Assembly: GCF_022045235.1 (NCBI RefSeq)
Contig: NW_027266271.1
Span: 14,012,001 to 14,076,000 of the forward strand
DNA length: 64,000 nucleotides
Reading direction: 5' to 3'
From: Haliotis cracherodii
Lineage: Eukaryota
Shown piece after piece: positions 10,065-60,354 of this stretch. Made by a program: the position numbers and the translations under genes. Below the pieces are notes generated by a model. That model saw only the letters and a program-made list of their open reading frames with translations. It searched no databases and was not told where the DNA came from. Within the stretch, counting starts at the first letter, position 1. The number at the start of each line of letters is the position of its first letter.

Positions 10065-10863
10065 GGAACAGGTTAACAGTAGCATTATATTGTCCATAGG
10101 CTACCGGAGAACTGGTTAACAGTATCATTATATTATCAAGAGGCTACTGGGGAACAGGTTAACAGTATCATTATATTATCCACAGGCTACTGGGGAACAG
10201 GTTAACAGTAGCATTATATTATCCACAGGCTATTGGGGAACAGGTTAACAGTAGCATTATATTATCCACAGGCTACTGGGGAACAGGTTAACAGTATCAT
10301 TATATTATCCACGGGCTACTGTGGAACAGGTTAACAGTATCATTATATTATCCAGAGGCTTCTTGGGCACAGGTTAACAGTATCATTATATTATCCAGAG
10401 GCTACTGTGGAACAGGTTAACAGTAGCATTATATTATCCACAGGCTATTGGGGAACAGGTTAACAGTATCATTATATTATCCACAGGCTACTGGGGAACA
10501 GGTTAACAGTATCATTATATTATCCACGGGCTACTGTGGAACAGATGAACAGTATCATTATATTATCCAGAGGCTTCTTGGGCACAGGTTAACAGTATCA
10601 TTATATTATCCAGAGGCTACTGTGGAACAGGTTAACAGTATCATTATATTATCCACAGGCTACTGGGGAACAGGTTAACAGTATCATTATATTATCCACA
10701 GGCTACCGTGGAACAGGTTAACAGTATCATTCTATTATCCACAGGCTACTGGGGAACAGGTTAACAGTATCATTATATTATCCAGAGGCTACTGGGGAAC
10801 AGGTTAACAGTATCAGTATATTATCCACAGGCTACTGGGGAACAGGTGAACAGTATCATTATA
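10065..10863 (+). repeat. 43-bp minisatellite, ~18 copies
   Basis: Unit GAACAGGTTAACAGTATCATTATATTATCCACAGGCTACTGGG; decayed copies extend back to ~9650. Confidence 0.97.
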
Positions 10864-10961
10864 TGGTGGTGAGGGATACCGAGAACTGTTTGCTGCAATC
10901 ACCTGCCATCTTGTATCTTCACGTTTGGTAAAAAAAGTTTTGGACAACAGTTTCTCGAACG

Positions 10962-11028
10962 ATGTCGACTTTCAGATGGAATATTTATTTCGTGGTCATG
11001 ACGACATTACCCGCAGTGTGTGATCTCG
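10962..11028 (+). CDS. Cadherin-like gene exon 1 (signal peptide)
   Basis: MSTFRWNIYFVVMTTLPAVCDL(G), followed by consensus donor GTAAGT; phase 1 joins exon 2 in frame. Confidence 0.72.
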
Positions 11029-14000
11029 GTAAGTACAACGTACAGATTTTGACTCATTGCCATTGATGACATGTGACAATGGGCGTTGGCTTTGAAATGG
11101 TTACACCCAAACCCAAACCCAAACCCAAACCCAGAGCTACCAAAATGATTGCAAACACCTGGTGTCATCACTGCTTTATTAGTGATCCCTTTATATAATC
11201 AATTCGAACTCAAAGACGCTTTAAAAAAAATGACAGTATGTGTGAAAAGTAAAACATTTATGCAACAGGTTCTGTGTTCTTGTGAAAACTGTTATGGAAC
11301 ACTTAAAGAAAACGTAAATGGATACTTAACAGTAAAAAACAAGTCATATACATCTGATATTTATGTTTAAGTTTCTATGTTAACATAGGTAAAGTGACGT
11401 TTACAACGGTAGGAGCCGGTTCCTTTAAAAATCTCATAGAGAAAGGGGTTGTTGTGGCTGGGAAATCGTCGCTCATGTTCTCCGTCAAGTCCTGTCACAG
11501 TGCCGTTATAGTAATCTCAGACATCATGGCCATCAAGGATACGTCCGGCAACTACTTCCTGCTAATGCTCGGCAACAATGAGAACACCATGGTCGTAGGT
11601 CAGGACAGTTGTTTTGCCTGTAAACGGACGAACTCAACAGCAGTCAAAGCGTTAAACTGTGACGAGATGAAGGATTTCTGGATCAGATGGGACAAAAAGG
11701 GTTTTTTTGAAACGGGATCTGGGACGGCAGTTGGGGTTAATACGTTGTTATCCCTCCAAGGACAGAAGGACATGTACCAAATCAATACCGCCGCTATTAC
11801 GTCCACGAACAAGATAACAGCACTCTGGGAGTTTACGAATGGTAGGTTCAAACAAGATTATGTACATACAAACGCATCTTGTTTGTAATGGCCCCGTGGA
11901 GGTCAAGGGTAGAATGAACCTCCCCATGAACCTATGCTGGACATACGAGGCGACTTAATGGACCGGGTAGTCATGTTCGGTGACTTGGTTGATGGCGTGT
12001 CATAGTACACCGACGGCGTGGGTCGTTTATCACGATATCAATCACTGAATTGTCTAGTATGACGTTGTCTACCTTGAATATTGCTGAGTGCGGAGTTAAA
12101 CAAGAAGCAAAAGCTAGTTTAAGATGGACATCGTTTCTAGAACTCATGTTATTGAATGTTTAATTATATATGTAAGCCGATCAATGAATCTGTAATGATG
12201 GTCTTTTCTGCGAGCTTTTGTTTTCCAATGGACTCTGGGACTATTATGTAGCTTAGCGCTTATTATGTTCGCGCGTCCGAGTTCGATTCATCATATGCGA
12301 AACCAATTATTGGCATTCCCTGCTGCTCTATTGCTGGAATATTCCTGAAAGCAGTATGAAACGATACTACACGCTCATCCTTTCCCCTGGCATCTAAACC
12401 CTTTGTCAAATTAATCCTTACTTATGAAGTCTGCCTGACTATAATAATATTGAATTATATCATATCACAAAAAGACAAATTATATAATGATATATATCAC
12501 AACTATTGACCGAAACATGAAAGAGTTAAACGGTACGTGCCCTATATGCTATCAATGTGTATTTTCACAGAGGACACATCCACGATGATCTATGAGCCTG
12601 TTCCAAGCGGCAGCACGGTGGTAGAGATGAGTGAGACGACCCCAGTCGGGGCGGATGTGTTCGACATAATCCTGAAGCCGCCCAACGAGAATATAACATT
12701 CAGATTAAACGGAAAAACGGCTGACATGTTCTTTGTAAATAAAACAAAGATCAAACTTGCGAAGAGTCTGGACTACGAGATGAAGCAGTTCCATACACTG
12801 TCAATATCGTGAGATAATAACAATCATACTTTGGGAGAGTAGATTCTATTAGAGTGAGCGAGTTTAGTTTAACGCCGCTATAACAGTATTTCAGTTATAT
12901 CACGGCTTGTGCGTTTAATGTCGGAGGAAGCCCGAAGTGATACAGGTCTTAGACGTTTACCACTTTGGGGAAACCCACGGGCAGGGATATGGAGCTGACA
13001 AACCTAGAAACATAATCGGGGCGAACCTGTATGCGAACCCATAATCATAGGATTCTGGCGTATGTAAGGGACGCAACTCTGCACAGCGAATTGCGGCGCC
13101 TTAGACGACTGAGGCAACCGGGCCCAATCTTAAGATTAGAAAATTAATATATCTATGGAGAATAACAATGCTATATCGACGAAAGTATATACTATACATA
13201 TTTAAATGTCGAGATGATTATTATCTTATGTCGAAGATTATATGATTGATGTCTATGGAGTGCTAGTTTTTCATGGTTGTTCTTTATATCCAGACCAAAA
13301 GAAATTTTCATATGAGATTGTGTGCTCGGTCTTTACAAGAAAAAAAAATATTTGTTTAAGTTTTGTAGGATGGAACAATAATACATATTATACACTTTCA
13401 ACCTTTGTGATATTATACGTTTTATATATTGAGCGTAGACGATACATTATACATAGATGCACATAGGTGATTCCATTTTTAGCTGCAGAAACGGACAATG
13501 CGTGCACGTTTCTGATGATATTGTTCGGGTTTATTTGATACCCCTTGAAGTTTGTTTCAATATGTTGTCAGCACAACTGCTGGACTATCCGCTTCAATGA
13601 CTATCGTTGTGCTGAACGCAATAGACGAAATTCCTCAAGTAAATGTCAGTGACCTCGTAATACCGGAAGAACTACCTGTCGGTACAGTGATTGGATGGAA
13701 TCTTACAGTACTAGACCCTGACACAAATGATACATTGTCCTACAAGATAGAAGGTATTTATTTTGTGTTTTGTTTTCCATCCATTGCTGAGTATGTTATG
13801 TCTTTGTTCAGATATGACTTTGCAATTGACTCAGTTCTGTGACAAAATGCATTGGGTCCTTGCACGAGTAATGGACGTAACTCGTGAATTTGGCACCGCT
13901 TACGCGTATTTTTATATTAAGAACAGACATTCAATTGATTAGTCTAATTACTGTGTTTATTGTAACTGATTCCTGATTCCAATGGCACACGGTTATGAAT

Positions 14001-17000
14001 TGCAATTTCTATCTTAGCTAGTATTTCTAGTAGATTATCAATTTCTCTTCCTGACATGTAGTATTGTTTCGATTTTCCTAGGCGTCATAAGTGACATGTT
14101 AACAATTCTACCAAATGGGAATCTTCAAGTCACAAAGAGAATAGATCGAGACACTATGGACAACTCCAGCATCGTGAGCAATCTTACCGTCAGTGTGTCT
14201 GACGCTAAACCTCACACCGTCACAGTTACTATTCCTGTGGCGATCAAGGACTTAAACGACAATCGGCCACAGTTCAACCAAACTATTTACCGGACTGAAA
14301 CACAAGAAAAACCAACCAAAGGTATCTTACAGTGTCGACTAGTCGTATTTGGTTTTAATATTATACACGATGATTAGCTTCAACTAAAAGTACCCAGGAC
14401 CTATTGGCTTAGTCATATGTTATAAATGTAATAGTGTAATTATATTTCAACTGTGCAACTGTATTTACATGTATAGTGCAACGCGGCTAAACGTAATCAT
14501 TCCACTTTATATATGGTTTAATTTGATGGATAATTCTTGTTTGACATTAGAACGATGAGGCTAATGAAACACGAAAATGAAAAAGGTCTCTCCTAGAGTT
14601 ATGCCAGGATACATAATGTAATATAACCAGCGAATCTTTCCAGTATCAGACCAACTATTAAGATGGAGCAGACCTGTTGTCTGAGGTTTTGTTCATCAGA
14701 TAATTCTCCTTAACTCGTCTACCAAGGGCATTATTTTGTGTATTCCTACGCTTTATAAAGCTTATAAATTTTCCAAAAGACGTCCTCAAACGAAATAGAG
14801 AGGGGAGGTCTTAAGGGACCAGTTCAAGTTTTGGGGCATACCTCTCCACCCGCCCCCCAAAATAATTCCGAAAATCCGAAGTCCGAAGTTTCGTGACCTC
14901 TTTTGTCACGCATTCTTGTGCTTTCCCCTATTTTTCAGAACATTTATCGACTGATGTTCATTTACTAGGTGTTGAAAATACTTAGTAGACTTTTTATAGA
15001 ATCTGATCAAATCTGCCATTCTGTATTACGCACTGCACAGATGGACTTACCGCTATTGCCGGCGACTATTCAGTCCTACCTTGTGGACGAATGGATGTAC
15101 TTTGTGACAAATCCTAACAGCATACGAATAAAAATAGGATCGGTTTAGTTTAGTTCCTATGAAAAAAACATTGAGAAATCAGGTAAGATTATTGTGTATG
15201 CATCCGACGTGGAAGTTTTGAACTGGCCCCTAAGACACAGTGTGTATGTCATTTAGAGTGTGATAATGAACACGGGACATGTCCTAACAGACGGGCGAAC
15301 GCTGAACATGTGACAGATGCATTTAATTTGACTTCAGATAGATCACTATTGACCCTGTCGGTCTGGGATGTGGATGAGGGTGGGAATGGTCATGTGAATC
15401 TGAGTATCCTGGAAGGTGGCAACAGTTTTTACCTGAAGAACAGCACTCTGTACGTCAAGGCTGGCCAGCTGGACTATGAAAGATCAAGCACCCACGAGGA
15501 GACTGTCATTGTGCAGGCGGTCGATCTACCTGAATCGGGTCCTTCCCAGTCAGAGACAATCGTCGTCCTTGTTCAAGTGAGTTTTTGAAATATTTGAATT
15601 TAGCATTGATAACGTTATATAGAGAATCTCACCCGAGTGTCTTTTGATATGTTGATATATTTGATATCAAAAGACACGAGGGGGAGATTTTATTTATCAT
15701 CCAATATCATTCTTCCAACTTTTTCAATTTGCAGACAGTAATAAGCAGTGTCTTAAGTGTAAAAGGTACTGCTCATAGCTTCTGTAGCAGAGCCATTGTG
15801 ATGTCATTTGATTGTGATGTCATGGTAACCAGTGACGTCACAATGGTCTGTAAAGCATTGTGATGTAATTTCATTGAAGCGATATCCACAGTGTAGATAT
15901 CGATTGATCTCATCCAAGCGATATCTCCTGTGGGAGCCAGTTTTGGATGATAAATGTTCTGTACATACATAAAAAAATGATTTTCTTGGAATCTTCCCAG
16001 GAGATATAGTTGGAATCGAGGTGAAACACAAAGAGGTACTTTGACCTTGGTAACACATTGATAGTATTTTGCAGGTATAATTTGAAGTATTGTGAGTACT
16101 ATTTATCATGATATCGTGTTATAGTAATTCATATTTACTCTGTAGGTTCTTCAAAAGGAAGCACAGCTGATTTCTTGGCTCTCGCCAGCGTCAGACGGCC
16201 TAGGGAGCTTTAAAGAAATCGTGATGTCGAGTTCGACTCCACTTGGAAGCACAGTGACTAAATTTGAGGTTTCCACCGCCAACAGCAGTGACATCATTCG
16301 CTACAATGTCACATCAAAGTCTTCTGCAGGTAGGTGTACGTTTGTATTGTTCTGACACCCACAACACTGTATGACAGTTCGACCAAAATAATTTAAAGGC
16401 TATGAATAGTGGGTGAACGGAGGACTGGTAGTCGAATGTGCTCAGTTGTTAACATCTGCTTGGTCGCTGTTTTAAATGCTTGGTGTTAACCCCTTTTGTA
16501 ATCCTTGGGATGTCAGTTTTAATATTTCGTCCTGCCTTTTTAACGTATCAAATACGCAAAAAAAGTTATAAAAACGCTATTGAAATATAGCTAATGCGTA
16601 AATTCTAAATATCAGATAAAACGACTCTGTATAATACAACTGCTTGATAAAATGATTGTGTAGCAGCCGATTCCCCTACCGACAATTACATTCGGAAAAG
16701 CTTCTGTGACAGACATACTGATAGATACCAATTGAAAAGCTCATCGTGCCTAGTCAATGTTCACGTTGTATCTTATTTAGTCGGTGATTGGTAATTCAAA
16801 CAACAGTGCCTTTCTTACAATATTAGGTTTTGCAAACAAAAAATGGCTTCCGGAGAGGGAGCCGAAGCAATACGCAGACAGGTATACTACTATTCATGTA
16901 GTTTTAAATTATTTACATGGATTGTTACGAAACAGGTTTTAAGTTAAATACCCAAATGTCAAGAAAGAGGTGGGTAAAAAATGAATACTCTCTAAAGCTT

Positions 17001-20000
17001 GTGGATACCCAATCAAAATCAAACCCCTGGGTAAAATACCGAAATGACCAAAAGCTTATCTTTTGCTCTGTTTTATATATCATAAGTGAAGAAGAGTTAC
17101 AGTGACTGACAGATATTTTTCGGACACTCCATCTAAGTTTTAACCTTTACTTTCGAGATGAACGATGAACGTCTTGCAATTCTTTCATGACGTCGTTTCT
17201 AGAGATTCATTATGGTGACGTAGTACATTGGCCGATCATATTTTTGCACCCATATTTGTTTATTCTCCCTGCAGTGTTTTATTGCATGATACACACTCAT
17301 CCCGTTTGTTTCTTAAATATCCGAGGTTTAATGACATGGCACATCAATAATTCGTGGTATAACACATGTCTTATTAAAATGGTTTGAATATTCTATTCTT
17401 CCTCAGAGTTTGATCTCAACCCTGATACAGGTGTGCTGAAGACAAAGTCGATGTTAGAAAGGCCATCCTACACTGTCATTATTTCTGCAACCAGCGGCAA
17501 TATCTCAATCAGCGGCACCTTAACAGTTATGGTCCAGAAAGCATTAGATACAAACAAGAACGATTCCCAAACTGTTCAGTTTGATAGATCCGTGTATATG
17601 GTATCAAGACCAGTCATGGGGGATGAAGGCAAATCTCTTGTACAAATTCGTGTTCTCGCCCCAAATGCATCTGTCATTAACATTTCAATGGACGCCGAAG
17701 GTAAGAAGGCATTCGTGCTGAAGAAAGGAAACCATTTCTGGAATCTTGTAGCCAGGCAACACGCTGTTTCTATACCTTCTGTCATAAACCTTACCGCCAT
17801 AGATCTGAATAGCACCAAAAGAGACACTTCGTTTGTTGTGGTGAATGGTTCATTCACGATACAGGGAACACCATCCCATACTGAAGCTAGGACCTCAATG
17901 GCATCGACAAACACACCATCATGCGCCACACAGTCGTCGGCCGAAATAGTTACAGCAACTGAGTCACAACATACCACAGCTTCTACAACTGTGGCAACTA
18001 CGATGACGACGACGACGACCGTAATACCGACCACCGTTACAGCATCTACCCGTCAAACTAATATTGGATCAGATTCAAAAACGATGAGAGGTAATCAGAT
18101 CGTTTTTCACTAAAAACAAGATTAAACTTGTAAACAACTGGATTGGACATGCAACATTTATTTTATGAAAGAGGGCAAAACACCATTATTGATTTTTCTT
18201 TTCTTTCACAGAATGTCCTCCCCCAAGCAGAACGAAAGAGGTTGCCTACATCAGCGTCATAGCTACCCAGGGTCTGGCTGTGGGAGCTCTGATAGGAGTT
18301 AAAGTTTTTGCAATAATGAAAAGGTTGGTAAAAATAGCGGTCAAATGTCGTTGTATCAAGGCCGCTTATCTTCAAATATCGTCAACCATTTTATTTCAAA
18401 ATATATATATTAAAATATGGGTTTCCTATTTACACAAAGTATTTCAACTCGTCAATTGACACTATAGCTGAAAAAATGATCGGTTCACTCATCAAAAAGT
18501 CCTTTCTACAAAATCATTGATCTCTCTCAATGACTTGTATCTCTCATTCAGACCATGATCCCTTTAACTCTCATAACGTCTCGAAACCATTCAATCATTT
18601 GCCCCTACACAGATCGACTGGCATCTTTCATTCACCCCGGTCCGTGAAGATCCGGCTGAGAACTGGTCTTCAGCAACCCATACTTGTCTTAAGAGGGGAC
18701 TAAGAGGATCGGGTTGTCCGATTCGCTAACTTGAAGCATGACATTGTATCCCAATTGCGTAGATCGATGATCATAGTGTTAATCACTGGATTGTCTGGTC
18801 CTGAATCAATTATTTACAGAGCGCCATGATGCTGCTGGAATATTGCTAAGTGACGCATTAAACAACAAATAAACACTCACCTTCTTAGTTCACCAATGAT
18901 CCCCTTTCACTTGTCCCCCTCTGTATAATGGTCATCACCACTTTGTCAGTCAAGTGACCTCTCCAACTAACCCATTAACACCTTGGGGATTCATAGGTAT
19001 AATAATGCTTATAATACGAGTCAACTGACACGACTGGTTGCGTTTACATCGTCTTTCGTCGAAGAGTGCTTATGCATTCTGTGACAGATTTGGCCGCAGA
19101 TCCAGACTCGATTGTTTGAAGGCTGCTATGAAATATGTGGAATGTTGCTCAATCACATTCACCGACTCACTCAAACATTCACTCGGTCACTGGTCCATTA
19201 AAGTCACCTCTGACCATTCCCACGCCCACTGGTTTCTTTCACACGCCCATTAAATCCTTTCATACGTCCATTGGTTCCTCTTATTAACCCACGGATTTCT
19301 ATCGCATGCCAAAAGGTTTCTGTCACTCGCCCATTGGTTCATCATCCTCAGCCTCAGTTTTCTTTTACACGCGCACTCGTTTCTCACATACGTCCTATTG
19401 TTATTTTCACACGCCCATTAGTTCCTCTCATTCACCTCGTTGTTTTCACATGCCAAAAGGTACCTTTCACACGTCCATTGGTTACCTTATTCACCCACAT
19501 GTCCACTTTTCCACTAGCTTACGTTTTCTTATGTCTCACTCACCTGCTCATCCCCCATACTCGATGCCACGTTTCATAGTGCAACAATTCCACCAATCCC
19601 TCATTCAGTGTTATACAGTTCAACGACACAAGCTACTTTTTATGCTTTCTTAATATGACAGGAAAAAGAAGAAGAATGCGATAGAGCCCGAAAGGCGAGA
19701 ACCTGTTGGATGTGAACCAGGTACTTTCATTTATGAAACTAGCGTATATTCAACACGTATGTCAATTCAGCTTCTTGCCAGAAACATCATGGTAATGTCA
19801 GGAGTGGTGATTAAGTTGAGATGGCATAGTCCTTATTTATGCATTAGTAGTTAAATAGTTAATACCATGATTTTGACGTTCCACGCACAATATTATTAAA
19901 CACAAGTTTAAACTTTGTCCTTTTAGTGTGTTTGAGGGGAGATATTCTATATCTAACTCAAACATGTAGATACGTTCCCATTGGAAAACAATTTATTCAC

Positions 20001-21718
20001 ATTCACCAATCCTCATGCAACTGAATGTGTAATTGATTTCAACGATAACTTTGCTATTCCTCAATCTCGCGTGATATGGAAATATACATTTTATTCTTTA
20101 TCATTGATCACGTTGTGTCTAACTATTATGTTTTCTAGAACGAAATTACTCTTCAAGAAAAGGAAATATAAAAAATGAAGCCACTTGTGAAGATACCATT
20201 TTGGAGATCGAAGACGAAACCAAGAACAGAAACCATATTTATAGCAAGGATCCTGTGCATGGAAAGGAGTGGACTCAAGATAAACTCAACCAAAATAGCC
20301 TTAAAGATGTAAACATTGAGAGCGACGCTGTAGTGCCTGGGAAACTGTCTTGCCTTGAAGTTGGGAAAGATTGTCTCGAGGATTCCAGTTCAACACATAG
20401 TAACGATTATGATAGTGGTGACAAAGAATCTGTTAAACCTGATGCTACTGATTCAGAAGTAAAACAAACATACCCTGACGAGGGAAAACGGTGTGGTACG
20501 GAAGAAAGAGGATCTTCAGTAGTTGAACCTTCAGAACTACCAACAAACCACGAAACTGAAGATCACAGTAGAGCTGATGATTCAAATGTGTCAGATGATG
20601 TTTCTGAAAGAAAGACAGACATCGGTACACGTCAACCTGAAGTACTGAATGAGGGAGAAACAGCCACTGATCATGAGGAGACAGATAGAACACCTATTTT
20701 AAGAGACGAGGAAATTAAAGAGTATGAAGACATTCTGAATCAAGATATGACTTCAGTCGAGAGCCATGTTGAGACGGGTAATAACACCATAGAGGAACCT
20801 CTTAGGCCCAATACTGAGGGTACATTGGATGGTGAAAAGTCAGAAGAACCGTGGAATCTCCAAGGATTGACTCCTGCATATTTAAGCCATTTGCCCGGTA
20901 ACACGCCAGAAAGCCCAACACAAGACGAAGAAAAAAATGCATCTGTGTATGCAGAGAGTACTGTGAATGAGACAGTGGCTCTATCGGACTTCATTGCCCA
21001 AGATGATGACTTTGACTACACCATCAGTAGAATGGAAGAAGGAAATCGGGTAATGAAGGATAACACAATGGACACCCAAGTAAATATCGACTCTCTTCCA
21101 AATTTCCAAGTTCGTGATATGTACAGCAGAGTACACACGTCACCGTTGGAGATGACCTCGCCATGCATCCTCGTCGAGAAGAGGGAACAGAAACATGTTA
21201 TAAACACTACCAATATTAACAAACAAAAGGACCAGAATAAAGTATCTGGCCAAACTCAGGCTGTAGACACCCTTATATCGAGGCTAAGTCCTTCTGAGGG
21301 TGCAGGCACACAACACTCTGTCTTACCTCAATCAGGACAACCATTTCCAGAAACTGCATCTAATGCACATAAGAACAACACAAAAGTAACTGACAATGGT
21401 TTCAATTCAGAAGATGACGACGACGATGAGGAAGAAGAAGAGGAGGAGGGGGAAGACATAAAGGAGCCAGCACCAGAGGGTAATGGTACAGCCCCTGCTA
21501 CAACATACCTTTCATCACAAACAGTGGCGGCATTGAACATAGAGTCTGTCAAGCAGGATGTGACGAGGTCCCAGGCTCAGAACATCCCAGTAGACACCAT
21601 TCCCCCAGAGTCAAAAAAGTCAAAAAAGGATGGAAAGAAAAAGAAAGGCGAAAAGAAAGGCAAATCAAAAAAGAAAGGTGCTTCAAAGAAAAAGAACAAG
21701 AAAGGAAAAGGAAAATAG
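10962..21718 (+). CDS. Cadherin-related single-pass membrane protein with N-terminal Methyltransf_FA-like domain (11 exons, 1345 aa)
   Basis: Exons 10962-11028, 11389-11841, 12571-12808, 13572-13753, 14082-14321, 15338-15576, 16146-16329, 17407-18090, 18212-18323, 19662-19720, 20139-21718. All introns are GT-AG with matching phases; total 4038 nt, open to TAG. Cadherin motifs PEELPVG, LDYE, DPD, DLNDNRPQF, DVDEGGNG. Confidence 0.85.
11105..11132 (+). repeat. (AAACCC)n microsatellite in intron 1
   Basis: Direct reading, about 4.5 units. Confidence 0.9.
11389..11841 (+). CDS. Exon 2: Methyltransf_FA / FAMeT-like beta domain
   Basis: FSVKSCHSAVIVIS...LMLGNNEN...LNCDEMKDFWIRW...GSG...ALWEF matches the remembered family pattern; symmetric phase 1-1 exon. 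Confidence 0.75.
11890..12110 (+). mobile_element. SINE-like family B, old copy in intron 2
   Basis: CCCCGTGGAGGTC...GAGGCGACT...GAATATTGCTGAGTGCGGAGTTAAAC. Confidence 0.7.
12245..12378 (+). mobile_element. SINE family A, degenerate
   Basis: GAGTTCGATTC B box; ATTGCTGGAATATTCCTGAAAGC tail. Confidence 0.55.
12571..12808 (+). CDS. Exon 3: cadherin repeat 1
   Basis: VEMSETTPVG...KSLDYE; acceptor TTTTCACAG, donor GTGAGA. Confidence 0.85.
12852..13125 (-). mobile_element. SINE family C in intron 3
   Basis: GGAGGAAGCCCGAAGTGATACAGGTCTTAGACGTTTACCA shared with the 2699 and 8607 copies. Confidence 0.8.
13572..13753 (+). CDS. Exon 4: cadherin repeats 1/2
   Basis: NAIDEIPQ...IPEELPVG...LDPDTND; acceptor position less certain. 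Confidence 0.8.
14082..14321 (+). CDS. Exon 5: cadherin repeats 2/3
   Basis: IDRD...VSD...DLNDNRPQF; acceptor TTTTCCTAG. Confidence 0.88.
14815..15230. mobile_element. MITE, PIF/Harbinger-like
   Basis: TIRs GGGACCAGTTCAA / TTGAACTGGCCCC (12 of 13 match), flanked by TAA on both sides. Confidence 0.7.
15338..15576 (+). CDS. Exon 6: cadherin repeat 3
   Basis: WDVDEGGNG...LDYE...QAVD; donor GTGAGT. Confidence 0.88.
15617..15955. mobile_element. Non-autonomous element with terminal hairpin and asymmetric inverted repeat
   Basis: 26-bp-arm hairpin 15625-15689, plus perfect 13-bp IR ATTTATCATCCAA (15692) / TTGGATGATAAAT (15943). Confidence 0.6.
16146..16329 (+). CDS. Exon 7: degenerate cadherin repeat 4 (not in ORF track)
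   Basis: VLQKEAQLISW...MSSSTPLGSTVTKFEVS...IRYNV; phase 0 to 1 links exons 6 and 8. Confidence 0.8.
17407..18090 (+). CDS. Exon 8: degenerate cadherin repeats 4/5 plus Thr-rich mucin-like stalk
   Basis: FDLNPDTGVL...QFDRSVY...TTASTTVATTMTTTTTVIPTT. Confidence 0.85.
18212..18323 (+). CDS. Exon 9: transmembrane helix
   Basis: Strong polypyrimidine acceptor; VAYISVIATQGLAVGALIGVKVFAIM. Confidence 0.8.
18640..18875 (+). mobile_element. SINE-like family B in intron 9
   Basis: CCGTGAAGATCCGG...GGTCTTCAGCAACCC...GCTGGAATATTGCTAAG. Confidence 0.85.
19160..19610 (+). repeat. Degenerate ~21-bp minisatellite
   Basis: Recurrent CACACGCCCATTGGTTCCTTT-like units. Confidence 0.7.
19662..19720 (+). CDS. 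Exon 10: basic juxtamembrane segment
   Basis: RKKKKNAIEPERREPVGCEP fits the positive-inside rule; phase 2 to 1. Confidence 0.75.
20139..21718 (+). CDS. Exon 11: acidic low-complexity cytoplasmic tail with Lys-rich C-terminus
   Basis: Acceptor TTTTCTAG, in frame with the 505-aa ORF 20201-21718. Confidence 0.85.
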
Positions 21719-35400: not shown

Positions 35401-35911
35401 TTTAGATGATTGTCAGAACACAGGTTTAAGTTTCATTGACGACTCCCGACATCACAGTAATTGCAATGACCGTAAGTTCACTGACGTCAGCAGCGTTTTC
35501 AATCTATTTAAATCATTTCCGAATGCTAATTCAACTAATTGAATAGTAAAAATCACTGGACGCAAATGCCTTACCTAATGTGATCATGTTCTATTGTTTG
35601 TAAAGGATTAACTATTGATCGCTAATTTGATACTTAACGGCCTTTAATCCCCCGATCCCAACATGCTCTTTGGCACTTGTCACGTGACCACAGCAGCAAA
35701 AGTAAACATTACAGTGTCACGTTCCCAATAATGCTAAGAGCGTTGGCGTGACATTGTAAAGTGATCAGTGTCACTTTGCGTTTGGCCACGTGGTGTTGGA
35801 AAAGGGGTATTAAACGTGATTTGTAGAGAGCCTAACATCACTGTTCTCTGGCAATTGAACATACAGCTAATGTTCATTTTTGTAACCGGATAACTCATAC
35901 AACTAAGCAGC

Positions 35912-37292
35912 ATGAAGAGATGTGGATCTGAGCTCTGTCTCCTTGAGAGCGACCTCTTAGAAAACACAACAAACACGTTTAACAGAGATAGTGAAGGTGA
36001 GTTAATACGCAATGGTATTATGTATGTAATCGATAAACTCAAATAAATGAACTCATAATATTCGTTGTTCCGTTCCGTATCTCTAAGCATAAAAAATACT
36101 TGTTCTGAAGAAAACATAAAAAACTTCATCTTTTATATGAAACTATGCAAAGCCCTTTCAAAATATATCTTACTTGCGCATTAAAAACAAGTGTCCATGT
36201 CAAATGAATGGCTATATTTATGTAACATTTTCAGATGCAAGATCGTCGGGCTATGAATCGTGTGACTCATTCACCCAAGCCCCGTCATCACCTTCAACTC
36301 CATCCTCCAAAGTCAGAGCTTCATCTAGCGGCCACAAGGAGGTAATGATGTACAGCAACATGGCCGACATGTCAGAAAGTCTACAGTACATCACTAGTAT
36401 GCCGGAGTTGTGTGACGTCACTTTTCTAGTTGGCAACCGGCACCTTCCCATTCATGGAGTTAAAGCAATCCTGGCTACCAGGAGCAGGTAAATATCCCTT
36501 ACAATTGAAACACGCCAATGGTCTTTTATTCGGAAACTTTTAGAAGTAAACACCGTGATAAATGTGTGTATTCCAAATTAAAGCACATGCAACAACATGA
36601 TTATCTGGCAGTAAGGATTTGAGAAAGTAGCAGTGCTTCAACACATACATTTCATCCCTGCCCTTTTATAATTATTCACACGTGCAGAGATGAGTTTCCT
36701 ATGAGATCTGTAGATGAAAATATAAATAGTTTCCCTTCATCTTTCCAGGGTTTTCTATCAGATGATCTTGCATCACCAGAGGAAGGTCACAGAGTCGGTG
36801 AAACCTAAATCTCGACTGAGGATGAGAGCCAAGTCGTCAACTGTCAATATGCACAGCAAACTCCAGATCCCAATCCCAGACTACGACCATGTTGTCTTTT
36901 CCAGTCTTCTTAACTTCTTACACTCCGGCCGAGTTCGAGTACAACTTGGAACAGTCACAGGTGAGCAGTAAAATGTGTTTGGAGGAAGAAAAACCTTTCT
37001 TCTTATGACATTCGATATTGAAGCATTTACTCCTTTACTGTAATAAACTGTAATATCAACAGTGAATTGTAATATGTTATTATGAATATAATTTCAATGG
37101 CTGCTTCTTATTTGAACAGGTTTATTCTGTGCTGCCATAGAATTTGGACTGAAGGATCTGCAGAAAGCATGCTGGGACTTCTTAAAACGGTGTGTAGGTG
37201 AAGATCAGAAGAGGGCTTTGATGACGTCAACACAACACTATCTTAAGAAGAAGGGAGCTCAGAAAATCTTGTCCCAAGTGTGCAGGTTGTGA
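35912..37292 (+). CDS. BTB/POZ protein, copy 3
   Basis: Exons 35912-35996, 36235-36487, 36749-36960, 37120-37292. Confidence 0.85.
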
Positions 37293-40200: not shown

Positions 40201-40801
40201 TGCATAGTCAGAAAGTTCCTTTCTTGAACAAATTCCGGAAAAGATGGATGCCACTTACTTAGTGTCAAACGCAAACAAACTTCATTCCACTTTAGATGAT
40301 TGTCAGAACACAGGTTTAAGTTTCATTGACGACTCCCGACATCACAGTAATTACAATGACCGTAAGTTCACTGACGTCAGCAGCGTTTTCAATCTATTTA
40401 AATCATTTCCGAATGCTAATTCAACTAATTGAATAGTAAAAATCACTGGACACAAATGCCTTACCTAATGTGATCATGTTCTATTGTTTGTAAAGGATTA
40501 ACTATTGATCGCTAATTTGATACTTAACGGCCTATAATCCCCCGATCCCAACATGCTCTTTGGCACTTGTCACGTGACCACAGCAGCAAAAGTAAACATT
40601 ACAGTGTCACGTTCCCAATAATGCTAAGAGCGTTGGCGTGACATTGTAAAGTGATCAGTGTCACTTTGCGTTTGGCCACGTGGTGTTGGAAAAGGGGTAT
40701 TAAACGTGATTTGTAGAGAGCCTAACATCACTGTTCTCTGGCAATTGAACATACAGCTAATGTTCATTTTTGTAACCGGATAACTCATACAACTAAGCAG
40801 C

Positions 40802-42180
40802 ATGAAGAGATGTGGATCTGAGCTCTGTCTCCTTGAGAGCGACCTCTTAGAAAACACAACAAACACGTTTAACAGAGATAGTGAAGGTGAGTTAATACGC
40901 AATGGTATTATGTATGTAATCGATAAACTCAAATAAATGAACTCATAATATTCGTTGTTCCGTTCCGTATCTCTAAGCATAAAAAATACTTGTTCTGAAG
41001 AAAACATAAAAAACTTCATCTTTTATATGAAACTATGCAAAGCCCTTTCAAAATATATCTTACTTGCGCATGAAACAAGTGTCCATGTCAAATGAATGGC
41101 TATATTTATGTAACATTTTCAGATGCAAGATCGTCGGGCTATGAATCGTGTGACTCATTCACCCAAGCCCCGTCATCACCTTCAACTCCATCCTCCAAAG
41201 TCAGAGCTTCATCTAGCGGCCACAAGGAGGTAATGATGTACAGCAACATGGCCGACATGTCAGAAAGTCTACAGTACATCACTAGTATGCCGGAGTTGTG
41301 TGACGTCACTTTTCTAGTTGGCAACCGGCACCTTCCCATTCATGGAGTTAAAGCAATCCTGGCTACCAGGAGCAGGTAAATATCCCTTACAATTGAAACA
41401 CGCCAATGGTCTTTTATTCGGAAACTTTTAGAAGTAAACACCGTGATAAATGTGTGTATTCCAAATTAAAGCACATGCAACAACATGATTATCTGGCAGT
41501 AAGGATTTGAGAAAGTAGCAGTGCTTCAACACATACATTTCATCCCTGCCCTTTTATAATTATTCACACGTGCAGAGATGAGTTTCCTATGAGATCTGTA
41601 GATGAAAATATAAATAGTTTCCCTTCATCTTTCCAGGGTTTTCTATCAGATGATCTTGCATCACCAGAGGAAGGTCACAGAGTCGGTGAAACCTAAATCT
41701 CGACTGAGGATGAGAGCCAAGTCGTCAACTGTCAATATGCACAGCAAACTCCAGATCCCAATCCCAGACTACGACCATGTTGTCTTTTCCAGTCTTCTTA
41801 ACTTCTTACACTCCGGCCGAGTTCGAGTACAACTTGGAACAGTCACAGGTGAGCAGTAAAATGTGTTTGGAGGAAGAAAAACCTTTCTTCTTATGACATT
41901 CGATATTGAAGCATTTACTCCTTTACTGTAATAAACTGTAATATCAACAGTGAATTGTAATATGTTATTATGAATATAATTTCAATGGCTGCTTCTTATT
42001 TGAACAGGTTTATTCTGTGCTGCCATAGAATTTGGACTGAAGGATCTGCAGAAAGCATGCTGGGACTTCTTAAAACGGTGTGTAGGTGAAGATCAGAAGA
42101 GGGCTTTGATGACGTCAACACAACACTATCTTAAGAAGAAGGGAGCTCAGAAAATCTTGTCCCAAGTGTGCAGGTTGTGA
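40802..42180 (+). CDS. BTB/POZ protein, copy 4
   Basis: Exons 40802-40886, 41123-41375, 41637-41848, 42008-42180. Confidence 0.85.
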
Positions 42181-54900: not shown

Positions 54901-55466
54901 CGGAAAAGATGGATGCCACTTACTTAGTGTCAAACGCAAACAAACTTCATTCCACTTTAGATGATTGTCAGAACACAGGTTTAAGTTTCATTGACGACTC
55001 CCGACATCACAGTAATTACAATGATCGTAAGTTCACTGACGTCAACAGCGTTTTCAATCTATTTAAATCATTTCCGAATGCTAATTCAACTAATTGAATA
55101 GTAAAAATCACTGGACGCAAATGCCTTACCTAATGTGATCATGTTCTATTGTTTGTAAAGGATTAACTATTGATCGCTAATTTGATACTTAACGGCCTTT
55201 AATCCCCCGATCCCAACATGCTCTTTGGCACTTGTCACGTGACCACAGCAGCAAAAGTAAACATTACAGTGTCACGTTCCCAATAATGCTAAGAGCGTTG
55301 GCGTGACATTGTAAAGTGATCAGTGTCACTTTGCGTTTGGCCACGTGGTGTTGGAAAAGGGGTATTAAACGTGATTTGTAGAGAGCCTAACATCACTGTT
55401 CTCTGGCAATTGAACATACAGCTAATGTTCATTTTTGTAACCGGATAACTCATACAACTAAGCAGC

Positions 55467-56845
55467 ATGAAGAGATGTGGATCTGAGCTCTGTCTCCTTG
55501 AGAGCGACCTCTTAGAAAACACAACAAACACGTTTAACAGAGATAGTGAAGGTGAGTTAATACGCAATGGTATTAAGTATGTAATCGATAAACTCAAATA
55601 AATGAACTCATAATATTCGTTGTTCCGTTCCGTATCTCTAAGCATAAAAAATACTTGTTCTGAAGAAAACATAAAAAACTTCATCTTTTATATGAAACTA
55701 TGCAAAGCCCTTTCAAAATATATCTTACTTGCGCATGAAACAAGTGTCCATGTCAAATGAATGGCTATATTTATGTAACATTTTCAGATGCAAGATCGTC
55801 GGGCTATGAATCGTGTGACTCATTCACCCAAGCCTCGTCATCACCTTCAACTCCATCCTCCAAAGTCAGAGCTTCATCTAGCGGCCACAAGGAGGTAACG
55901 ATGTACAGCAACATGGCCGACATGTCAGAAAGTCTACAGTACATCACTAGTATGCCGGAGTTGTGTGACGTCACTTTTCTAGTTGGCAACCGGCACCTTC
56001 CCATTCATGGAGTTAAAGCAATCCTGGCTACCAGGAGCAGGTAAATATCCCTTACAATTGAAACACGCCAATGGTCTTTTATTCGGAAACTTTTAGAAGT
56101 AAACACCGTGATAAATGTGTGTATTCCAAATTGAAGCACATGCAACAACATGATTATCTGGCAGTAAGGATTTGAGAAAGTAGCAGTGCTTCAACACATA
56201 CATTTCATCCCTGCCCTTTTATAATTATTCACACGTGCAGAGATGAGTTTCCTATGAGATCTGTAGATGGAAATATAAATAGTTTCCCTTCATCTTTCCA
56301 GGGTTTTCTATCAGATGATCTTGCATCACCAGAGGAAGGTCACAGAGTCGGTGAAACCTAAATCTCGACTGAGGATGAGACCCAAGTCGTCAACTGTCAA
56401 TATGCACAGCAAACTCCAGATCCCAATCCCAGACTACGACCATGTTGTCTTTTCCAGTCTTCTTAACTTCTTACACTCCGGCCGAGTTCGAGTACAACTT
56501 GGAACAGTCACAGGTGAGCAGTAAAATGTGTTTGGAGGAAGAAAAACCTTTCTTCTTATGACATTCGATATTGAAGCATTTACTCCTTTACTGTAATAAA
56601 CTGTAATATCAACAGTGAATTGTAATATGTTATTATGAATATAATTTCAATGGCTGCTTCTTATTTGTACAGGTTTATTCTGTGCTGCCATAGAATTTGG
56701 ACTGAAGGATCTGCAGAAAGCATGCTGGGACTTCTTAAAACGGTGTGTAGGTGAAGATCAGAAGAGGGCTTTGATGACGTCAACACAACACTATCTTAAG
56801 AAGAAGGGAGCTCAGAAAATCTTGTCCCAAGTGTGCAGGTTGTGA
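55467..56845 (+). CDS. BTB/POZ protein, copy 7
   Basis: Exons 55467-55551, 55788-56040, 56302-56513, 56673-56845. Confidence 0.85.
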
Positions 56846-59800: not shown

Positions 59801-60354
59801 ATGCCACTTATTTAGTGTCAAACGCAAACAAACTTCATTCCACTTTAGATGATTGTCAGAACACAGGTTTAAGTTTCATTGACGACTCCCGACATCACAG
59901 TAATTACAATGACCGTAAGTTCACTGACGTCAGCAGCGTTTTCAATCTATTTAAATCATTTCCGAATGCTAATTCAACTAATTGAATAGTAAAAATCACT
60001 GGACGCAAATGCCTTACCTAATGTGATCATGTTCTATTGTTTGTAAAGGATTAACTATTGATCGCTAAATTGATACTTAACGGCCTTTAATCCCCCGATC
60101 CCAAAATGCTCTTTGGCACTTGTCACGTGACCACAGCAGCAAAAGTAAACATTACAGTGTCACGTTCCCAATAATGCTAAGAGCGTTGGCGTGACATTGT
60201 AAAGTGATCAGTGTCACTTTGCGTTTGGCCACGTGGTGTTGGAAAAGGGGTATTAAACGTGATTTGTAGAGAGCCTAACATCACTGTTCTCTGGCAATTG
60301 AACATACAGCTAATGTTCATTTTTGTAACCGGATAACTCATACAACTAAGCAGC

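What the first reader, a model, noticed from the sequence alone, without database searches (positions are those of the whole stretch)
10962..21718. Unusual receptor architecture: FAMeT-like domain + cadherin repeats + mucin stalk + large acidic tail
Seen: one phase-consistent 1345-aa spliced ORF. The Methyltransf_FA-like domain sits on its own phase 1-1 exon after a signal peptide, as expected for exon shuffling. Known: this domain occurs in crustacean 'FAMeT' proteins and CPAMD8 and its function is unclear; cadherin-plus-mucin stalks recall vertebrate CDHR5. Inference: a lineage-specific adhesion or recognition receptor in which the FAMeT-like fold is the distal extracellular binding module rather than an enzyme. 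I do not know a characterised protein with this combination.
Basis: partly seen in the sequence, partly recalled or inferred. Interest (0 to 1): 0.75.

Follow-up and report, generated by a model that had tools for sequence, protein, structure and literature searches.

The report
Lectin-headed cadherin receptor in abalone
This is a ten-exon abalone gene for a cell-surface cadherin-type receptor whose outermost domain is a so-called farnesoic-acid methyltransferase domain that is predicted to fold like a sugar-binding lectin, and it belongs to a small undescribed gene family in some sea snails.

Summary
The described features are in the sequence. Ten exons on the + strand (10962-21718) have AG/GT borders and consistent phases. 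Exon 2 (11389-11841, phase 1-1) hits Pfam Methyltransf_FA above the curated cutoff. Exons 3-8 carry five cadherin repeats, the last degenerate, followed by a Ser/Thr-rich stalk. Exon 9 holds a transmembrane segment. Exon 10 is a 519-residue acidic tail with a polybasic end.

No RNA evidence could be obtained. The domain link rests on paralogues. Eight of 15 Methyltransf_FA loci examined in this Haliotis genome have cadherin exons following in order. In one paralogue a single uninterrupted exon encodes both the domain and the start of the first cadherin repeat. RefSeq models from three Haliotis species and Gigantopelta share the architecture but are auto-named "protocadherin-like".

An AlphaFold model of exon 2 (pLDDT 93.5) is a galectin/CBM/ConA-like beta-sandwich, not a methyltransferase fold. 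That supports a distal binding head.

The combination is not unique, but I found no paper describing it. This gene's own product was not found in the protein libraries I could search. Function is inferred, not shown.

The parts
10962..11028 (+). Exon 1: start codon and signal-peptide-like segment (22 codons plus 1 nt, ends in phase 1)
   Evidence: Read directly. It is the first ATG after an in-frame stop. The core is hydrophobic. The donor is GT at 11029. The C9 paralogue also has a separate signal-peptide exon.
11389..11841 (+). Exon 2: Methyltransf_FA (PF12248) domain, 453 nt, phase 1-1. Predicted galectin/CBM-like beta-sandwich.
   Evidence: Pfam scores 34.5 bits against a cutoff of 24.2. 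The family's near-invariant residues are all present: C35, L42, G61, L88, C90, W97, W100, G109, G111, W146. The AF2 model has pLDDT 93.5. Of 7 listed differences to DNA run X2 in this exon, 5 are synonymous third-position changes.
12571..12808 (+). Exon 3: first part of cadherin repeat 1
   Evidence: Pfam Cadherin, E 1.3e-4. It follows in order in tblastn with P0151 (aa 167-250), P0027 (200-279) and P0108 (177-255), directly after their Methyltransf_FA domains.
13572..13753 (+). Exon 4: end of repeat 1, a degenerate linker (NAIDEIP), start of repeat 2
   Evidence: Phase-consistent acceptor and donor. tblastn with P0151 aa 243-310, P0027 272-344 and P0034 235-306. Motif position.
14082..14321 (+). 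Exon 5: end of repeat 2, the only canonical Ca2+-type linker (DLNDNRPQF at 14249), start of repeat 3
   Evidence: Pfam Cadherin, E 0.036. tblastn. Motif.
15257..15576 (+). Exon 6: repeat 3. The alternative in-frame acceptor at 15338 removes 27 residues that hold two Cys.
   Evidence: Pfam Cadherin scores 31.1 bits against a cutoff of 28.8, and the match begins at about 15337. Paralogue exons here are 255-261 nt, closer to the 239-nt form. Sequence.
16146..16329 (+). Exon 7: non-canonical linker and start of repeat 4
   Evidence: Open frame with an AG/GT phase 0 to phase 1 border. No Pfam hit on its own. Its position matches the C9 paralogue exon.
17407..17858 (+). Exon 8, first part: end of repeat 4, degenerate linker, and degenerate membrane-proximal repeat 5
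   Evidence: Pfam Cadherin, E 0.01. It aligns in order with the matching exons of the C9 and C1 paralogues, where C1 has a canonical DVNDNPP linker and a clear fifth repeat. Single copy in the genome.
17859..18090 (+). Exon 8, second part: Ser/Thr-rich mucin-like stalk
   Evidence: 36 of 77 residues are S or T. P0027 and P0153 have a similar T-rich stretch before their transmembrane segments.
18212..18323 (+). Exon 9: juxtamembrane Cys/Pro stretch, a transmembrane segment (18241-18318), then K-R. The donor is uncertain (18323, or possibly 18349).
   Evidence: Best 19-residue hydropathy is 1.81. Donors are listed. The C9 paralogue has a matching transmembrane exon.
20158..21718 (+). Exon 10: 519-residue acidic, probably disordered cytoplasmic tail. 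It has a D5E7 run at 21413-21448, a polybasic end at 21614-21715 and a TAG stop at 21716-21718. The alternative acceptor is 20139.
   Evidence: The 531-codon open frame has a chance probability of about 1e-16. It has no upstream ATG of its own near its start. Single copy in the genome. The C9 paralogue has a 436-codon last-exon frame of the same make-up. ATTAAA lies at 21764.

Best explanation
The locus is an intact protein-coding gene of an abalone (Haliotis) genome.

It encodes a type I membrane protein of about 1320-1346 residues, made up of:
- a signal peptide;
- one Methyltransf_FA domain;
- five cadherin repeats, of which only one linker has the canonical Ca2+ motif and the fifth repeat is degenerate;
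- a Ser/Thr-rich stalk of about 77 residues that is probably O-glycosylated;
- one transmembrane helix;
- an acidic disordered tail of about 520 residues that ends in a polybasic cluster.

It belongs to a gastropod gene family in which this domain caps a short cadherin stalk.

Most likely mode of action (inferred): the Methyltransf_FA domain is a lectin-like beta-sandwich that binds an extracellular ligand, perhaps a glycan. It sits at the membrane-distal tip. The cadherin repeats and mucin stalk act mainly as a partly Ca2+-stiffened spacer that holds it away from the membrane. The tail couples to intracellular partners. Because exon 2 is a symmetric phase 1-1 exon, skipping it would keep the frame, so a head-less isoform is possible.

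Shown here: the domains, their order, the exon phases, the paralogues and the predicted fold.

Inferred: the splicing of this particular gene, its expression, ligand binding and tail function.

The head-to-cadherin link:
- Four gastropod RefSeq proteins align in order across E2 to E3-E6, with contiguous query coordinates.
- All four of those proteins carry both Pfam families; they are 4 of the 10 proteins scanned in that call.
- In the C1 paralogue, P0153 residues 52-278 lie on one uninterrupted exon at 100% identity. That stretch holds the Methyltransf_FA domain plus the first ~80 residues of repeat 1.
- The C9 paralogue has the same exon layout. Its exons are 237/192/240/255/237/690/144 nt; the window's are 238/182/240/239 or 320/184/684/112 nt.
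- Eight of 15 Methyltransf_FA loci examined have cadherin exons following in order within the stretch fetched.

Constraint on the sequence:
- 7 of 9 listed exonic differences to DNA run X2 are synonymous.
- The 531-codon tail frame has a chance probability of about 1e-16.

Fold of the head domain:
- AF2 model: pLDDT 93.5, pTM 0.88, all beta.
- Foldseek top hits are galectin carbohydrate-recognition domains, E 1.7e-5 and TM about 0.56.
- VIA-align gives CBM66 at Z 13.0 (rmsd 2.8, 132 residues aligned), then galectins at Z about 12, legume-lectin-like, SPRY and GH32 C-terminal domains.

Extracellular use of the domain elsewhere:
- It sits at the N-terminus of MEGF10/scavenger-receptor-like proteins (P0016, P0023, P0028).
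- It also occurs with C-type lectin, fibrinogen, Sushi and WSC domains.
- A secreted Haliotis shell-matrix protein carries it (passage of PMC6003135).
- CPAMD8 carries it (passage of PMC9363628).
- The enzymatic role of FAMeT is doubted (passages of PMC10015273).

Tail:
- The last-exon frame of the C9 paralogue (L017:8332-9640, 436 codons) is also acidic, with a poly-D/E run and a K-rich end.
Against: - No RNA support. In one search the two runs guessed to be RNA gave only short low-depth pieces. One of them (13966-14195) crosses an intron-exon border. None of the 15 joints shown lies at a predicted intron; 614 further joints were not shown.
- The gene's own product was not found. The best library match to E2 is 47% identical (P0001, the C9 paralogue), although paralogues from this same genome are in the library. 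The gene may therefore be unannotated, annotated without E2, or weakly expressed.
- The E9-E10 joint needs either a weaker acceptor or a weak donor.
- The tail has no detectable relative among proteins of 286-909 residues, none in the ESM Atlas, and no significant alignment to the C9 tail (E 4.9). The resemblance between the two tails is compositional only.
- Fold similarity to lectins comes with only 5-14% identity and does not show sugar binding.
- No galectin Pfam hit was found on E2 at E up to 1.
Confidence: 0.72

Rival explanations
1. There are two products rather than one. Exons 1-2 would give a small secreted single-domain Methyltransf_FA protein, ending in the read-through frame after exon 2. 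The cadherin exons would then belong to another transcript, or to an isoform that skips exon 2. The full fusion would be rare or absent for this gene.
For: - After the exon-2 donor the frame runs on for 15 codons to a stop at 11886-11888.
- Most library hits to E2 are single-domain proteins. Of the 150 listed, 116 are under 400 residues.
- A secreted Haliotis shell protein has signal peptide plus this domain only (PMC6003135 passage).
- Exon 2 is phase 1-1, so skipping it keeps the frame.
- No protein containing this E2 was found in the libraries.
Against: - Exon 3 has no start codon with a signal peptide of its own.
- Paralogues with the same exon layout are modelled as fusions. One has both domains on a single exon.
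- No AATAAA or ATTAAA lies within about 700 nt after the read-through stop.
Confidence: 0.13
2. The locus is a silent or decaying duplicate, that is, an unexpressed paralogue or young pseudogene. Its frames are still open only because too little time has passed.
For: - No RNA evidence.
- Its product is absent from the protein libraries, although paralogues of the same genome are present.
- Three of four cadherin linkers lack the canonical Ca2+ motif.
- The E9-E10 splice signals are awkward.
Against: - E2 is only 45% identical to its nearest paralogue, so the duplication is old.
- All ten exons are nevertheless open with AG/GT borders.
- A 531-codon open frame is not expected by chance, at about 1e-16.
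- 7 of 9 listed exonic differences to another individual's DNA are synonymous.
Confidence: 0.1
3. The Methyltransf_FA domain is a true O-methyltransferase displayed on the cell surface, acting as an ecto-enzyme on a sesquiterpenoid or other carboxylate.
For: - The Pfam family name and the original crustacean reports (recalled).
- The Pfam hit itself.
Against: - The model is an all-beta sandwich. Its matches are lectins, carbohydrate-binding modules and SPRY domains, and no methyltransferase is among the rows listed.
- The PDB profile search finds nothing.
- Passages of PMC10015273 say methylation by FAMeT was never reliably shown in vitro and that the Drosophila mutant left hormone levels unchanged.
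- S-adenosylmethionine is not expected outside the cell (general knowledge).
Confidence: 0.03

Closest known systems
RefSeq-predicted 'protocadherin-like' proteins of Haliotis and Gigantopelta that carry an N-terminal Methyltransf_FA domain: XP_048242089.1 (P0151), XP_071102907.1 (P0001), XP_046330605.2 (P0027), XP_071100661.1 (P0153), XP_046561080.1 (P0034), XP_046562252.1 (P0131) and XP_041372466.1 (P0108)
   Same: - The order of parts is the same: signal peptide, Methyltransf_FA, cadherin repeats, a T/S-rich stretch, then a transmembrane segment.
- They align in order with the window's exons 2-6.
- The C9 paralogue has the same exon layout.
   Different: - Identity is only 26-45% in the head domain and about 28-40% in the repeats.
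- The modelled tails are short, whereas the window has a 519-residue acidic tail. The C9 locus does hold a long acidic open frame beyond the RefSeq end.
- None of these proteins is characterised. Their names are automatic.
- In P0151 and P0131 the Methyltransf_FA score falls below Pfam's cutoff, at 22.6 and 20.2 against 24.2. Domain databases may therefore not show the head at all.
Arthropod FAMeT proteins (2x PF12248, or PF12248 plus DUF3421)
   Same: They share the PF12248 domain (PMC10015273 passages).
   Different: By the passages read, arthropod FAMeT proteins consist only of PF12248 copies with or without DUF3421. Here there is a single copy at the tip of a membrane receptor, behind a signal peptide.
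CPAMD8 and other extracellular multidomain proteins with PF12248
   Same: The domain is used in secreted or extracellular proteins (PMC9363628 passage). P0004 and P0015 combine it with trypsin, TSP1, C-type lectin, fibrinogen-C, WSC and Sushi domains.
   Different: Those proteins have no cadherin repeats. In them the domain is internal or repeated, not an N-terminal cap.
CDHR5 (mucin-like protocadherin) and other short cadherin-related proteins of vertebrates
   Same: The layout is analogous: a few cadherin repeats, a mucin-like stalk and a single transmembrane segment. The CDHR5 layout is recalled, not tested here.
   Different: CDHR5 has no lectin-like head. No orthology is indicated. Among the 120 listed hits to P0151, bird CDHR3 proteins appear at about 25% identity but no CDHR5. 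The tails are unrelated.
Galectin carbohydrate-recognition domains, CBM66 and the ConA-like lectin/glucanase fold
   Same: The predicted fold matches: Z 11-13, rmsd 2.5-3.1 over 122-142 residues. Foldseek gives TM about 0.5-0.64.
   Different: Sequence identity is 5-14%. No galectin Pfam match was found. The galectin sugar-binding motif (recalled) is not evident in the exon-2 sequence. Ligand binding is untested.

Membership tests
Methyltransf_FA (Pfam PF12248) | Profile match above Pfam's gathering score | tested here: met
   34.5 bits against a cutoff of 24.2, E 2.1e-8, covering profile positions 20-134 of 140.
Methyltransf_FA (Pfam PF12248) | The family's conserved residues (Cys pair, Trp and Gly positions) | tested here: met
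   In the 90-row alignment A1 the near-invariant columns are C35, L42, G61, L88, C90, W97, W100, G109, G111 and W146, all numbered on the window's own residues.
SAM-dependent O-methyltransferase (enzyme class implied by the domain name) | A Rossmann-type SAM-binding fold, or any methyltransferase structural match | tested here: not met
   The model is all beta. No methyltransferase is among the rows listed: about 45 Foldseek rows and 50 VIA-align rows. The PDB profile search gave only noise, E 0.8 or worse.
SAM-dependent O-methyltransferase (enzyme class implied by the domain name) | Methyl-transfer activity | not testable with these tools
   This needs an enzyme assay. Passages of PMC10015273 say it was never reliably shown for FAMeT.
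Cadherin superfamily | Tandem extracellular cadherin repeats (PF00028) | tested here: met
   Exon 6 scores 31.1 bits against a cutoff of 28.8. Three further exon pieces match with E from 1.3e-4 to 0.036. The exons align in order with the cadherin repeats of P0027, P0151, P0034 and P0108 and with paralogue exons.
Cadherin superfamily | Ca2+-binding linker motif (DxNDNxP) between repeats | tested here: inconclusive
   One of four linkers is canonical (DLNDNRPQF at 14249). One is degenerate (NAIDEIP at 13615). Two lack the motif. The motif definition is recalled.
Cadherin superfamily | Signal peptide and a single transmembrane segment (type I topology) | tested here: inconclusive
   Hydropathy only: 1.04 for E1 and 1.81 for E9 over 19 residues. 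There are 21 N-glycosylation sequons in exons 2-8. No dedicated topology predictor was available.
Clustered or delta protocadherins (the names RefSeq gives the paralogues) | Six or seven repeats, with the ectodomain largely on one large exon (recalled definition) | tested here: not met
   There are five repeats spread over six exons, plus an extra N-terminal domain.
CDHR5 / mucin-like protocadherin | Orthology, or specific sequence similarity beyond generic cadherin repeats | tested here: inconclusive
There is no CDHR5 among the 120 listed relatives of the nearest paralogue P0151. Only the layout is analogous.
Galectins | Gal-bind_lectin profile match or conserved sugar-binding motif | tested here: not met
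   Pfam reports only Methyltransf_FA for exon 2 at E up to 1. Identity to galectin structures is 5-14%. Only the fold is shared.

The most novel reading that the evidence does not exclude
Methyltransf_FA would be a glycan- or ligand-binding lectin domain misnamed as an enzyme.

Vetigastropods and neomphaline snails would have expanded a family of 'lectin-headed cadherins', with at least eight loci in this genome. These, together with Methyltransf_FA-headed MEGF10/scavenger-like receptors, would serve as cell-surface recognition receptors for microbes, settlement cues or gametes.

The window gene would be an unannotated member of this family. Its long acidic tail with a polybasic end would give it a signalling output that the modelled family members lack.
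Probability: 0.25. Interest if true: 0.7.

Novelty: new variant of a known kind. Interest (0 to 1): 0.5.

Why it matters
The Methyltransf_FA domain carries an enzyme name that the literature itself doubts. Here it sits on the outer tip of membrane receptors, behind signal peptides, and it models as a lectin or carbohydrate-binding-module type sandwich. That gives a concrete, testable alternative function for the domain wherever it occurs, including CPAMD8, shell-matrix proteins and arthropod FAMeT.

For mollusc biology it points to a lineage-restricted, expanded receptor family that automatic annotation hides under "protocadherin gamma/Fat/stan-like" names. In some members the head domain scores below Pfam's cutoff, so domain databases may not show it.

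For annotation, this locus appears to lack a matching protein in the public sets I could search.

Tried and rejected
RNA evidence
- The look-up of sequencing runs found no run on record as RNA that holds the stretch.
- Read laying on 10900-16800 showed that X2 and X4 are DNA runs covering introns at 22-34x. X1 and X7 (kind guessed) hold only short low-depth pieces or repeat pieces. The junctions therefore stayed unchecked.

Searches for the gene's own product or orthologue
- HMMER with E2 against 1.84 billion representatives: best hit 47% identical.
- Word search with the nearest paralogue P0151, whole: 376 hits, almost all generic cadherins.
- The same search limited to the head region of P0151: only P0001.
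- The tail exon alone: nothing among proteins of 286-909 residues.
- A full-length product of about 1345 residues lies outside the length range.
- The joined ten-exon model was not built or searched. Absence from the databases is therefore not shown.

Other checks
- P0156 (H. rubra, 1497 residues) was tested as a possible orthologue and rejected. It gave a single weak match to exon 4.
- The tail gave nothing in the ESM Atlas. Its alignment to the C9 tail is not significant. Its Pfam CDV3 hit is below cutoff, at 19 bits against 27, and I take it as compositional.
- I built a tree of 31 head domains to ask whether the cadherin fusion arose once. Deep nodes were unresolved. The label needs 6 changes on the best tree, but well-supported branches force only 1. 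A single origin is therefore neither shown nor excluded. Only the C1 paralogue plus Gigantopelta P0108 pair is solid, at 99/99 support.
- I considered a micro-exon between E9 and E10. By analogy with the C9 paralogue, which goes straight from its transmembrane exon to its tail exon, I judged it unnecessary.

Literature
- 0 papers hold 'Methyltransf_FA' together with 'cadherin'.
- 0 papers hold 'farnesoic acid' with 'cadherin' and 'domain architecture'.
- 2 irrelevant papers hold 'FAMeT' with 'galectin'.
- 23 papers hold 'abalone' with 'protocadherin'. Of the 15 listed, none concerns this family judging by title and abstract start.
- I saw only passages, not the whole text, of PMC10015273, PMC9363628 and PMC6003135.
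- Supplements were closed. The shell-proteome supplement of PMC6003135 could hold more on Methyltransf_FA proteins.

Earlier findings
- Nothing was noted at this place. Two notes on other cadherin genes of this genome did not bear on this locus.


Full report
WHAT IS THERE

The window is eukaryotic DNA of about 38% G+C. On the + strand between 10962 and 21718 I read ten exons. Every internal border is AG...GT and the phases chain without a break.

| Exon | Coordinates | Content |
|---|---|---|
| E1 | 10962-11028 | Start codon and a hydrophobic signal-peptide-like segment; ends in phase 1 |
| E2 | 11389-11841 | 453 nt, phase 1-1; Methyltransf_FA domain |
| E3 | 12571-12808 | Cadherin repeat 1, first part |
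| E4 | 13572-13753 | End of repeat 1, start of repeat 2 |
| E5 | 14082-14321 | End of repeat 2, start of repeat 3 |
| E6 | 15257-15576 | Repeat 3; in-frame alternative acceptor at 15338 |
| E7 | 16146-16329 | Start of repeat 4 |
| E8 | 17407-18090 | End of repeat 4, repeat 5, stalk |
| E9 | 18212-18323 | Transmembrane segment |
| E10 | 20158-21718 | Tail; TAG stop |

The lengths sum to 4041 nt, which is 1346 codons plus the stop. The 15338 acceptor gives 1319. I added up exon lengths only.

DOMAINS

Pfam, exon by exon:
- E2 is Methyltransf_FA, 34.5 bits against a cutoff of 24.2.
- Cadherin is found on E3 (E 1.3e-4), E5 (0.036), E6 (31.1 bits against a cutoff of 28.8) and E8 (0.01).

An alignment of E8 with the matching exons of two paralogues shows that E8 holds the end of a fourth repeat, a degenerate linker and a degenerate fifth repeat.

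Only one of the four linkers has the canonical DxNDNxP motif (DLNDNRPQF at 14249). One is degenerate (NAIDEIP) and two lack the motif. The motif definition is recalled.

The remaining features:
- The end of E8 is a stalk in which 36 of 77 residues are Ser or Thr.
- E9 has a 26-residue hydrophobic segment followed by K-R.
- Exons 2-8 carry 21 N-glycosylation sequons.
- E10 encodes 519 residues with 110 D+E and 64 K+R.

E10 also has a D5E7 run at 21413-21448 and a 34-residue polybasic end at 21614-21715. Its 531-codon open frame has a chance probability of about 1e-16. It has no start codon of its own near its beginning.

WEAK POINTS OF THE MODEL

- The best E9 donor (18323, phase 2) does not fit the strongest E10 acceptor (20139, which needs phase 1).
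- Two in-frame solutions exist: 18323 with 20158, or the weak donor 18349 with 20139. They differ by about 15 juxtamembrane residues.
- For E6, the 15338 acceptor fits the Pfam cadherin profile without an insertion. It is also closer to the 255-261 nt size of the paralogous exons. The 15257 form adds 27 residues with two Cys.

RNA EVIDENCE

None was obtained. No run on record as RNA holds the stretch.

Four runs were laid on 10900-16800:
- X2 and X4 are DNA. Their contigs cross introns at 22-34x and differ from the window by about 3%.
- X1 and X7 (kind guessed) give only short pieces, one of which crosses the intron-E5 border.
- The 15 joints shown all lie inside high-copy intronic repeats. 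A further 614 joints were not shown.

The listed differences to X2 that fall in exons are informative. Seven of nine are synonymous third-position changes. The table is truncated, so this is only a sample.

SUPPORT FROM RELATIVES

HMMER with E2 against 1.84 billion representative proteins gave 217 hits at E up to 1e-3. The best (P0001) is 47% identical.

Pfam on ten of the longer hits:
- Four have N-terminal Methyltransf_FA followed by cadherin repeats: P0001, P0027, P0034 and P0108.
- Two have it before laminin-type EGF repeats: P0023 and P0028.
- Others combine it with trypsin, TSP1, C-type lectin, fibrinogen-C, WSC and Sushi domains.

A local phmmer screen with four generic cadherins found cadherin regions in 5 of the 150 listed hits. 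All five are RefSeq predictions from Haliotis cracherodii, H. rufescens, H. rubra or Gigantopelta aegis. Their automatic names are "protocadherin gamma-A1-like", "protocadherin Fat 3-like" and "protocadherin-like wing polarity protein stan".

tblastn of four of these proteins on the window gives matches in order, with contiguous query coordinates running from E2 into E3-E6. For example, P0151 aligns as 22-171, 167-250, 243-310 and 310-372.

THE WINDOW'S OWN GENOME

The genome is 1.18 Gb in 80 contigs. It holds at least 52 Methyltransf_FA-like exon matches.

It is a Haliotis genome. P0153 maps to contig C1 at 100% identity and P0001 to C9 at 97-100%.

Two paralogues are decisive:
- At C1, residues 52-278 of P0153 are encoded by one uninterrupted 681-nt exon. 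That stretch holds the whole Methyltransf_FA domain plus the first ~80 residues of cadherin repeat 1. A Methyltransf_FA-cadherin polypeptide therefore exists in this genome without any splice prediction.
- At C9, the exon layout matches the window's exon for exon. There is a signal-peptide exon and a head domain (there split in two). Exons of 237/192/240/255/237/690/144 nt then follow; the window's are 238/182/240/239 or 320/184/684/112 nt.

I fetched about 10 kb downstream of 11 further Methyltransf_FA exons and about 30 kb for a twelfth. Five of these 12 loci have cadherin exons following in order. With the window, C9 and C1, that makes 8 of 15 loci. Two of the seven loci without cadherin exons are the MEGF10-like genes.

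The tail exon and E8 are single copy in the genome.

A tree of 31 head domains left the deep nodes unresolved. It did join the C1 paralogue to the Gigantopelta protein at 99/99 support. At least that branch of the family therefore predates the split between the two snail lineages.

THE TAIL

No relative was found among proteins of 286-909 residues or in the ESM Atlas.

The last-exon frame of the C9 paralogue is 436 codons long (L017:8332-9640). It continues past the point where the RefSeq model of the sister species ends. It has the same make-up: acidic, with a poly-D/E run and a K-rich end. The two tails do not align significantly (E 4.9). I take this as compositional support that a long acidic tail belongs to this kind of receptor, and nothing stronger.

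WHAT THE HEAD DOMAIN IS

I modelled E2 with AlphaFold2 on a 90-row alignment made of E2 and 89 of the 150 listed hits, the short ones. The result has pLDDT 93.5 and pTM 0.88, and is an all-beta domain of twelve strands.

- Foldseek against the PDB puts galectin carbohydrate-recognition domains first (E 1.7e-5, TM about 0.56). Legume lectin and GH16 follow.
- VIA-align against 48,161 chains gives CBM66 at Z 13.0 (rmsd 2.8, 132 residues aligned). Galectins follow at Z about 12, then legume-lectin-like, SPRY and GH32 C-terminal domains.
- No methyltransferase appears in either list.
- A sequence profile of the family finds no solved structure.

Identity to all these structures is 5-14%, and E2 has no galectin Pfam match. 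What is shared is the ConA/galectin-like sandwich fold, not a demonstrated sugar site.

The literature agrees with a non-enzymatic reading, from the passages I read:
[quoted passage not shown] It adds that methylation was never reliably shown in vitro and that the Drosophila mutant had unchanged hormone levels.
- PMC9363628 lists the domain as typical of CPAMD8.
- PMC6003135 lists a Haliotis shell-matrix protein with a signal peptide and this domain.

HOW IT MOST LIKELY WORKS

This section is inference.

The protein is a type I surface receptor whose ligand-binding part is the lectin-like head. The head is held out from the membrane by five cadherin repeats, with one Ca2+-type linker, and by an O-glycosylated stalk.

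Because repeat 1 is capped by another domain, the strand-swap adhesion of classical cadherins is unlikely. That mechanism needs the free N-terminus of repeat 1 (recalled). A protocadherin-like antiparallel contact cannot be excluded.

The same head sits on MEGF10/scavenger-receptor-like proteins and next to C-type lectin and fibrinogen domains. This points to recognition of microbes, matrix or cues rather than cell-cell adhesion.

The acidic, disordered tail with its polybasic end could bind the inner leaflet or act after cleavage. Nothing tests this.

Exon 2 is phase 1-1, so a head-less isoform is possible. A short secreted exon 1-2 product is also conceivable.

COMPARISON AND NOVELTY

The gene belongs to the cadherin superfamily and carries a bona fide PF12248 domain.

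It is not a clustered or delta protocadherin by repeat number or exon structure, despite the names given to its paralogues. It is only analogous in layout to CDHR5. It shares a fold, not membership, with galectins.

The architecture is not unique to this locus. It is a family with at least eight loci here and with public predicted proteins in four species.

I found no paper that describes it:
- 0 papers for 'Methyltransf_FA' with 'cadherin'.
- 0 for 'farnesoic acid' with 'cadherin' and 'domain architecture'.
- Nothing relevant among the 15 listed of 23 papers for 'abalone' with 'protocadherin'.

In two family members the head domain scores below Pfam's cutoff, which may hide the architecture from domain databases.

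The window gene's own product was not found in the libraries I could search. A full-length model would fall outside two of those searches' length ranges, and I could not query the locus annotation directly.

VERDICT

- The splice of this gene, its expression and its function remain to be shown.
- I rate it a new variant of a known kind (a lectin-headed cadherin-related receptor family) of moderate interest.

Noticed in passing
window 30000-64000 (ORF copies at 35734-36129, 40624-41019, 55289-55684, 60177-60572, minus strand): A tandem array with a period of about 4.89 kb. Four copies of a 131-codon ORF are identical or differ at one residue, spaced 4890, 14665 and 4888 nt apart. The G+C profile alternates with the same period. 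I did not determine what the unit is.
   Followed up: no
window 11885-12278, 12870-13263, 15628-16021 (introns 2, 3 and 6): High-copy interspersed repeats. The summed contig depth in DNA runs reaches 1e5-2e6, against about 25-35 for flanking DNA. The loose ends at 13027 and 13066 read like the end of a tRNA-derived SINE.
   Followed up: partly
window 19214-19655 (intron 9): A C/T-rich stretch in which all three + frames stay open for 100-120 codons. It includes a 21-nt tandem repeat at 19217-19279, and G+C skew is -0.17 over 18-20 kb. I read it as low-complexity intron DNA, not as an exon.
   Followed up: partly
window 10448-10860, just upstream of the start codon: The ORF translation shows a near-repeat of a ~30-residue unit. 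The DNA continues in the same pattern up to about 10860, which suggests a minisatellite next to the likely promoter.
   Followed up: no
window 11100-11135 (intron 1): A short (CCCAAA)n microsatellite. Reads seem to be cut there.
   Followed up: no
   Followed up: no
L017:8332-9640 (own genome, contig C9): The last exon of the nearest paralogue lies in a 436-codon open frame. This frame runs about 345 codons past the point where the RefSeq model of the sister species (P0151) ends. It encodes an acidic tail with a K-rich end. The same-genome RefSeq model P0001 stops at 553 residues, in the middle of the cadherin repeats. Both public models may be incomplete or may be alternative isoforms.
   Followed up: partly
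L024 and L025 (own genome, contig C56): These Methyltransf_FA exons are near-identical to the head domains of MEGF10/scavenger-receptor-like RefSeq proteins P0016 and P0028 (100/100 support; EGF_laminin in P0028). The same head domain therefore caps a second receptor scaffold in this genome.
   Followed up: partly
P0002 (Lingula anatina, 3814 residues): This uncharacterised brachiopod protein has 13 matched Methyltransf_FA stretches. It is a very large tandem array of the domain.
   Followed up: no
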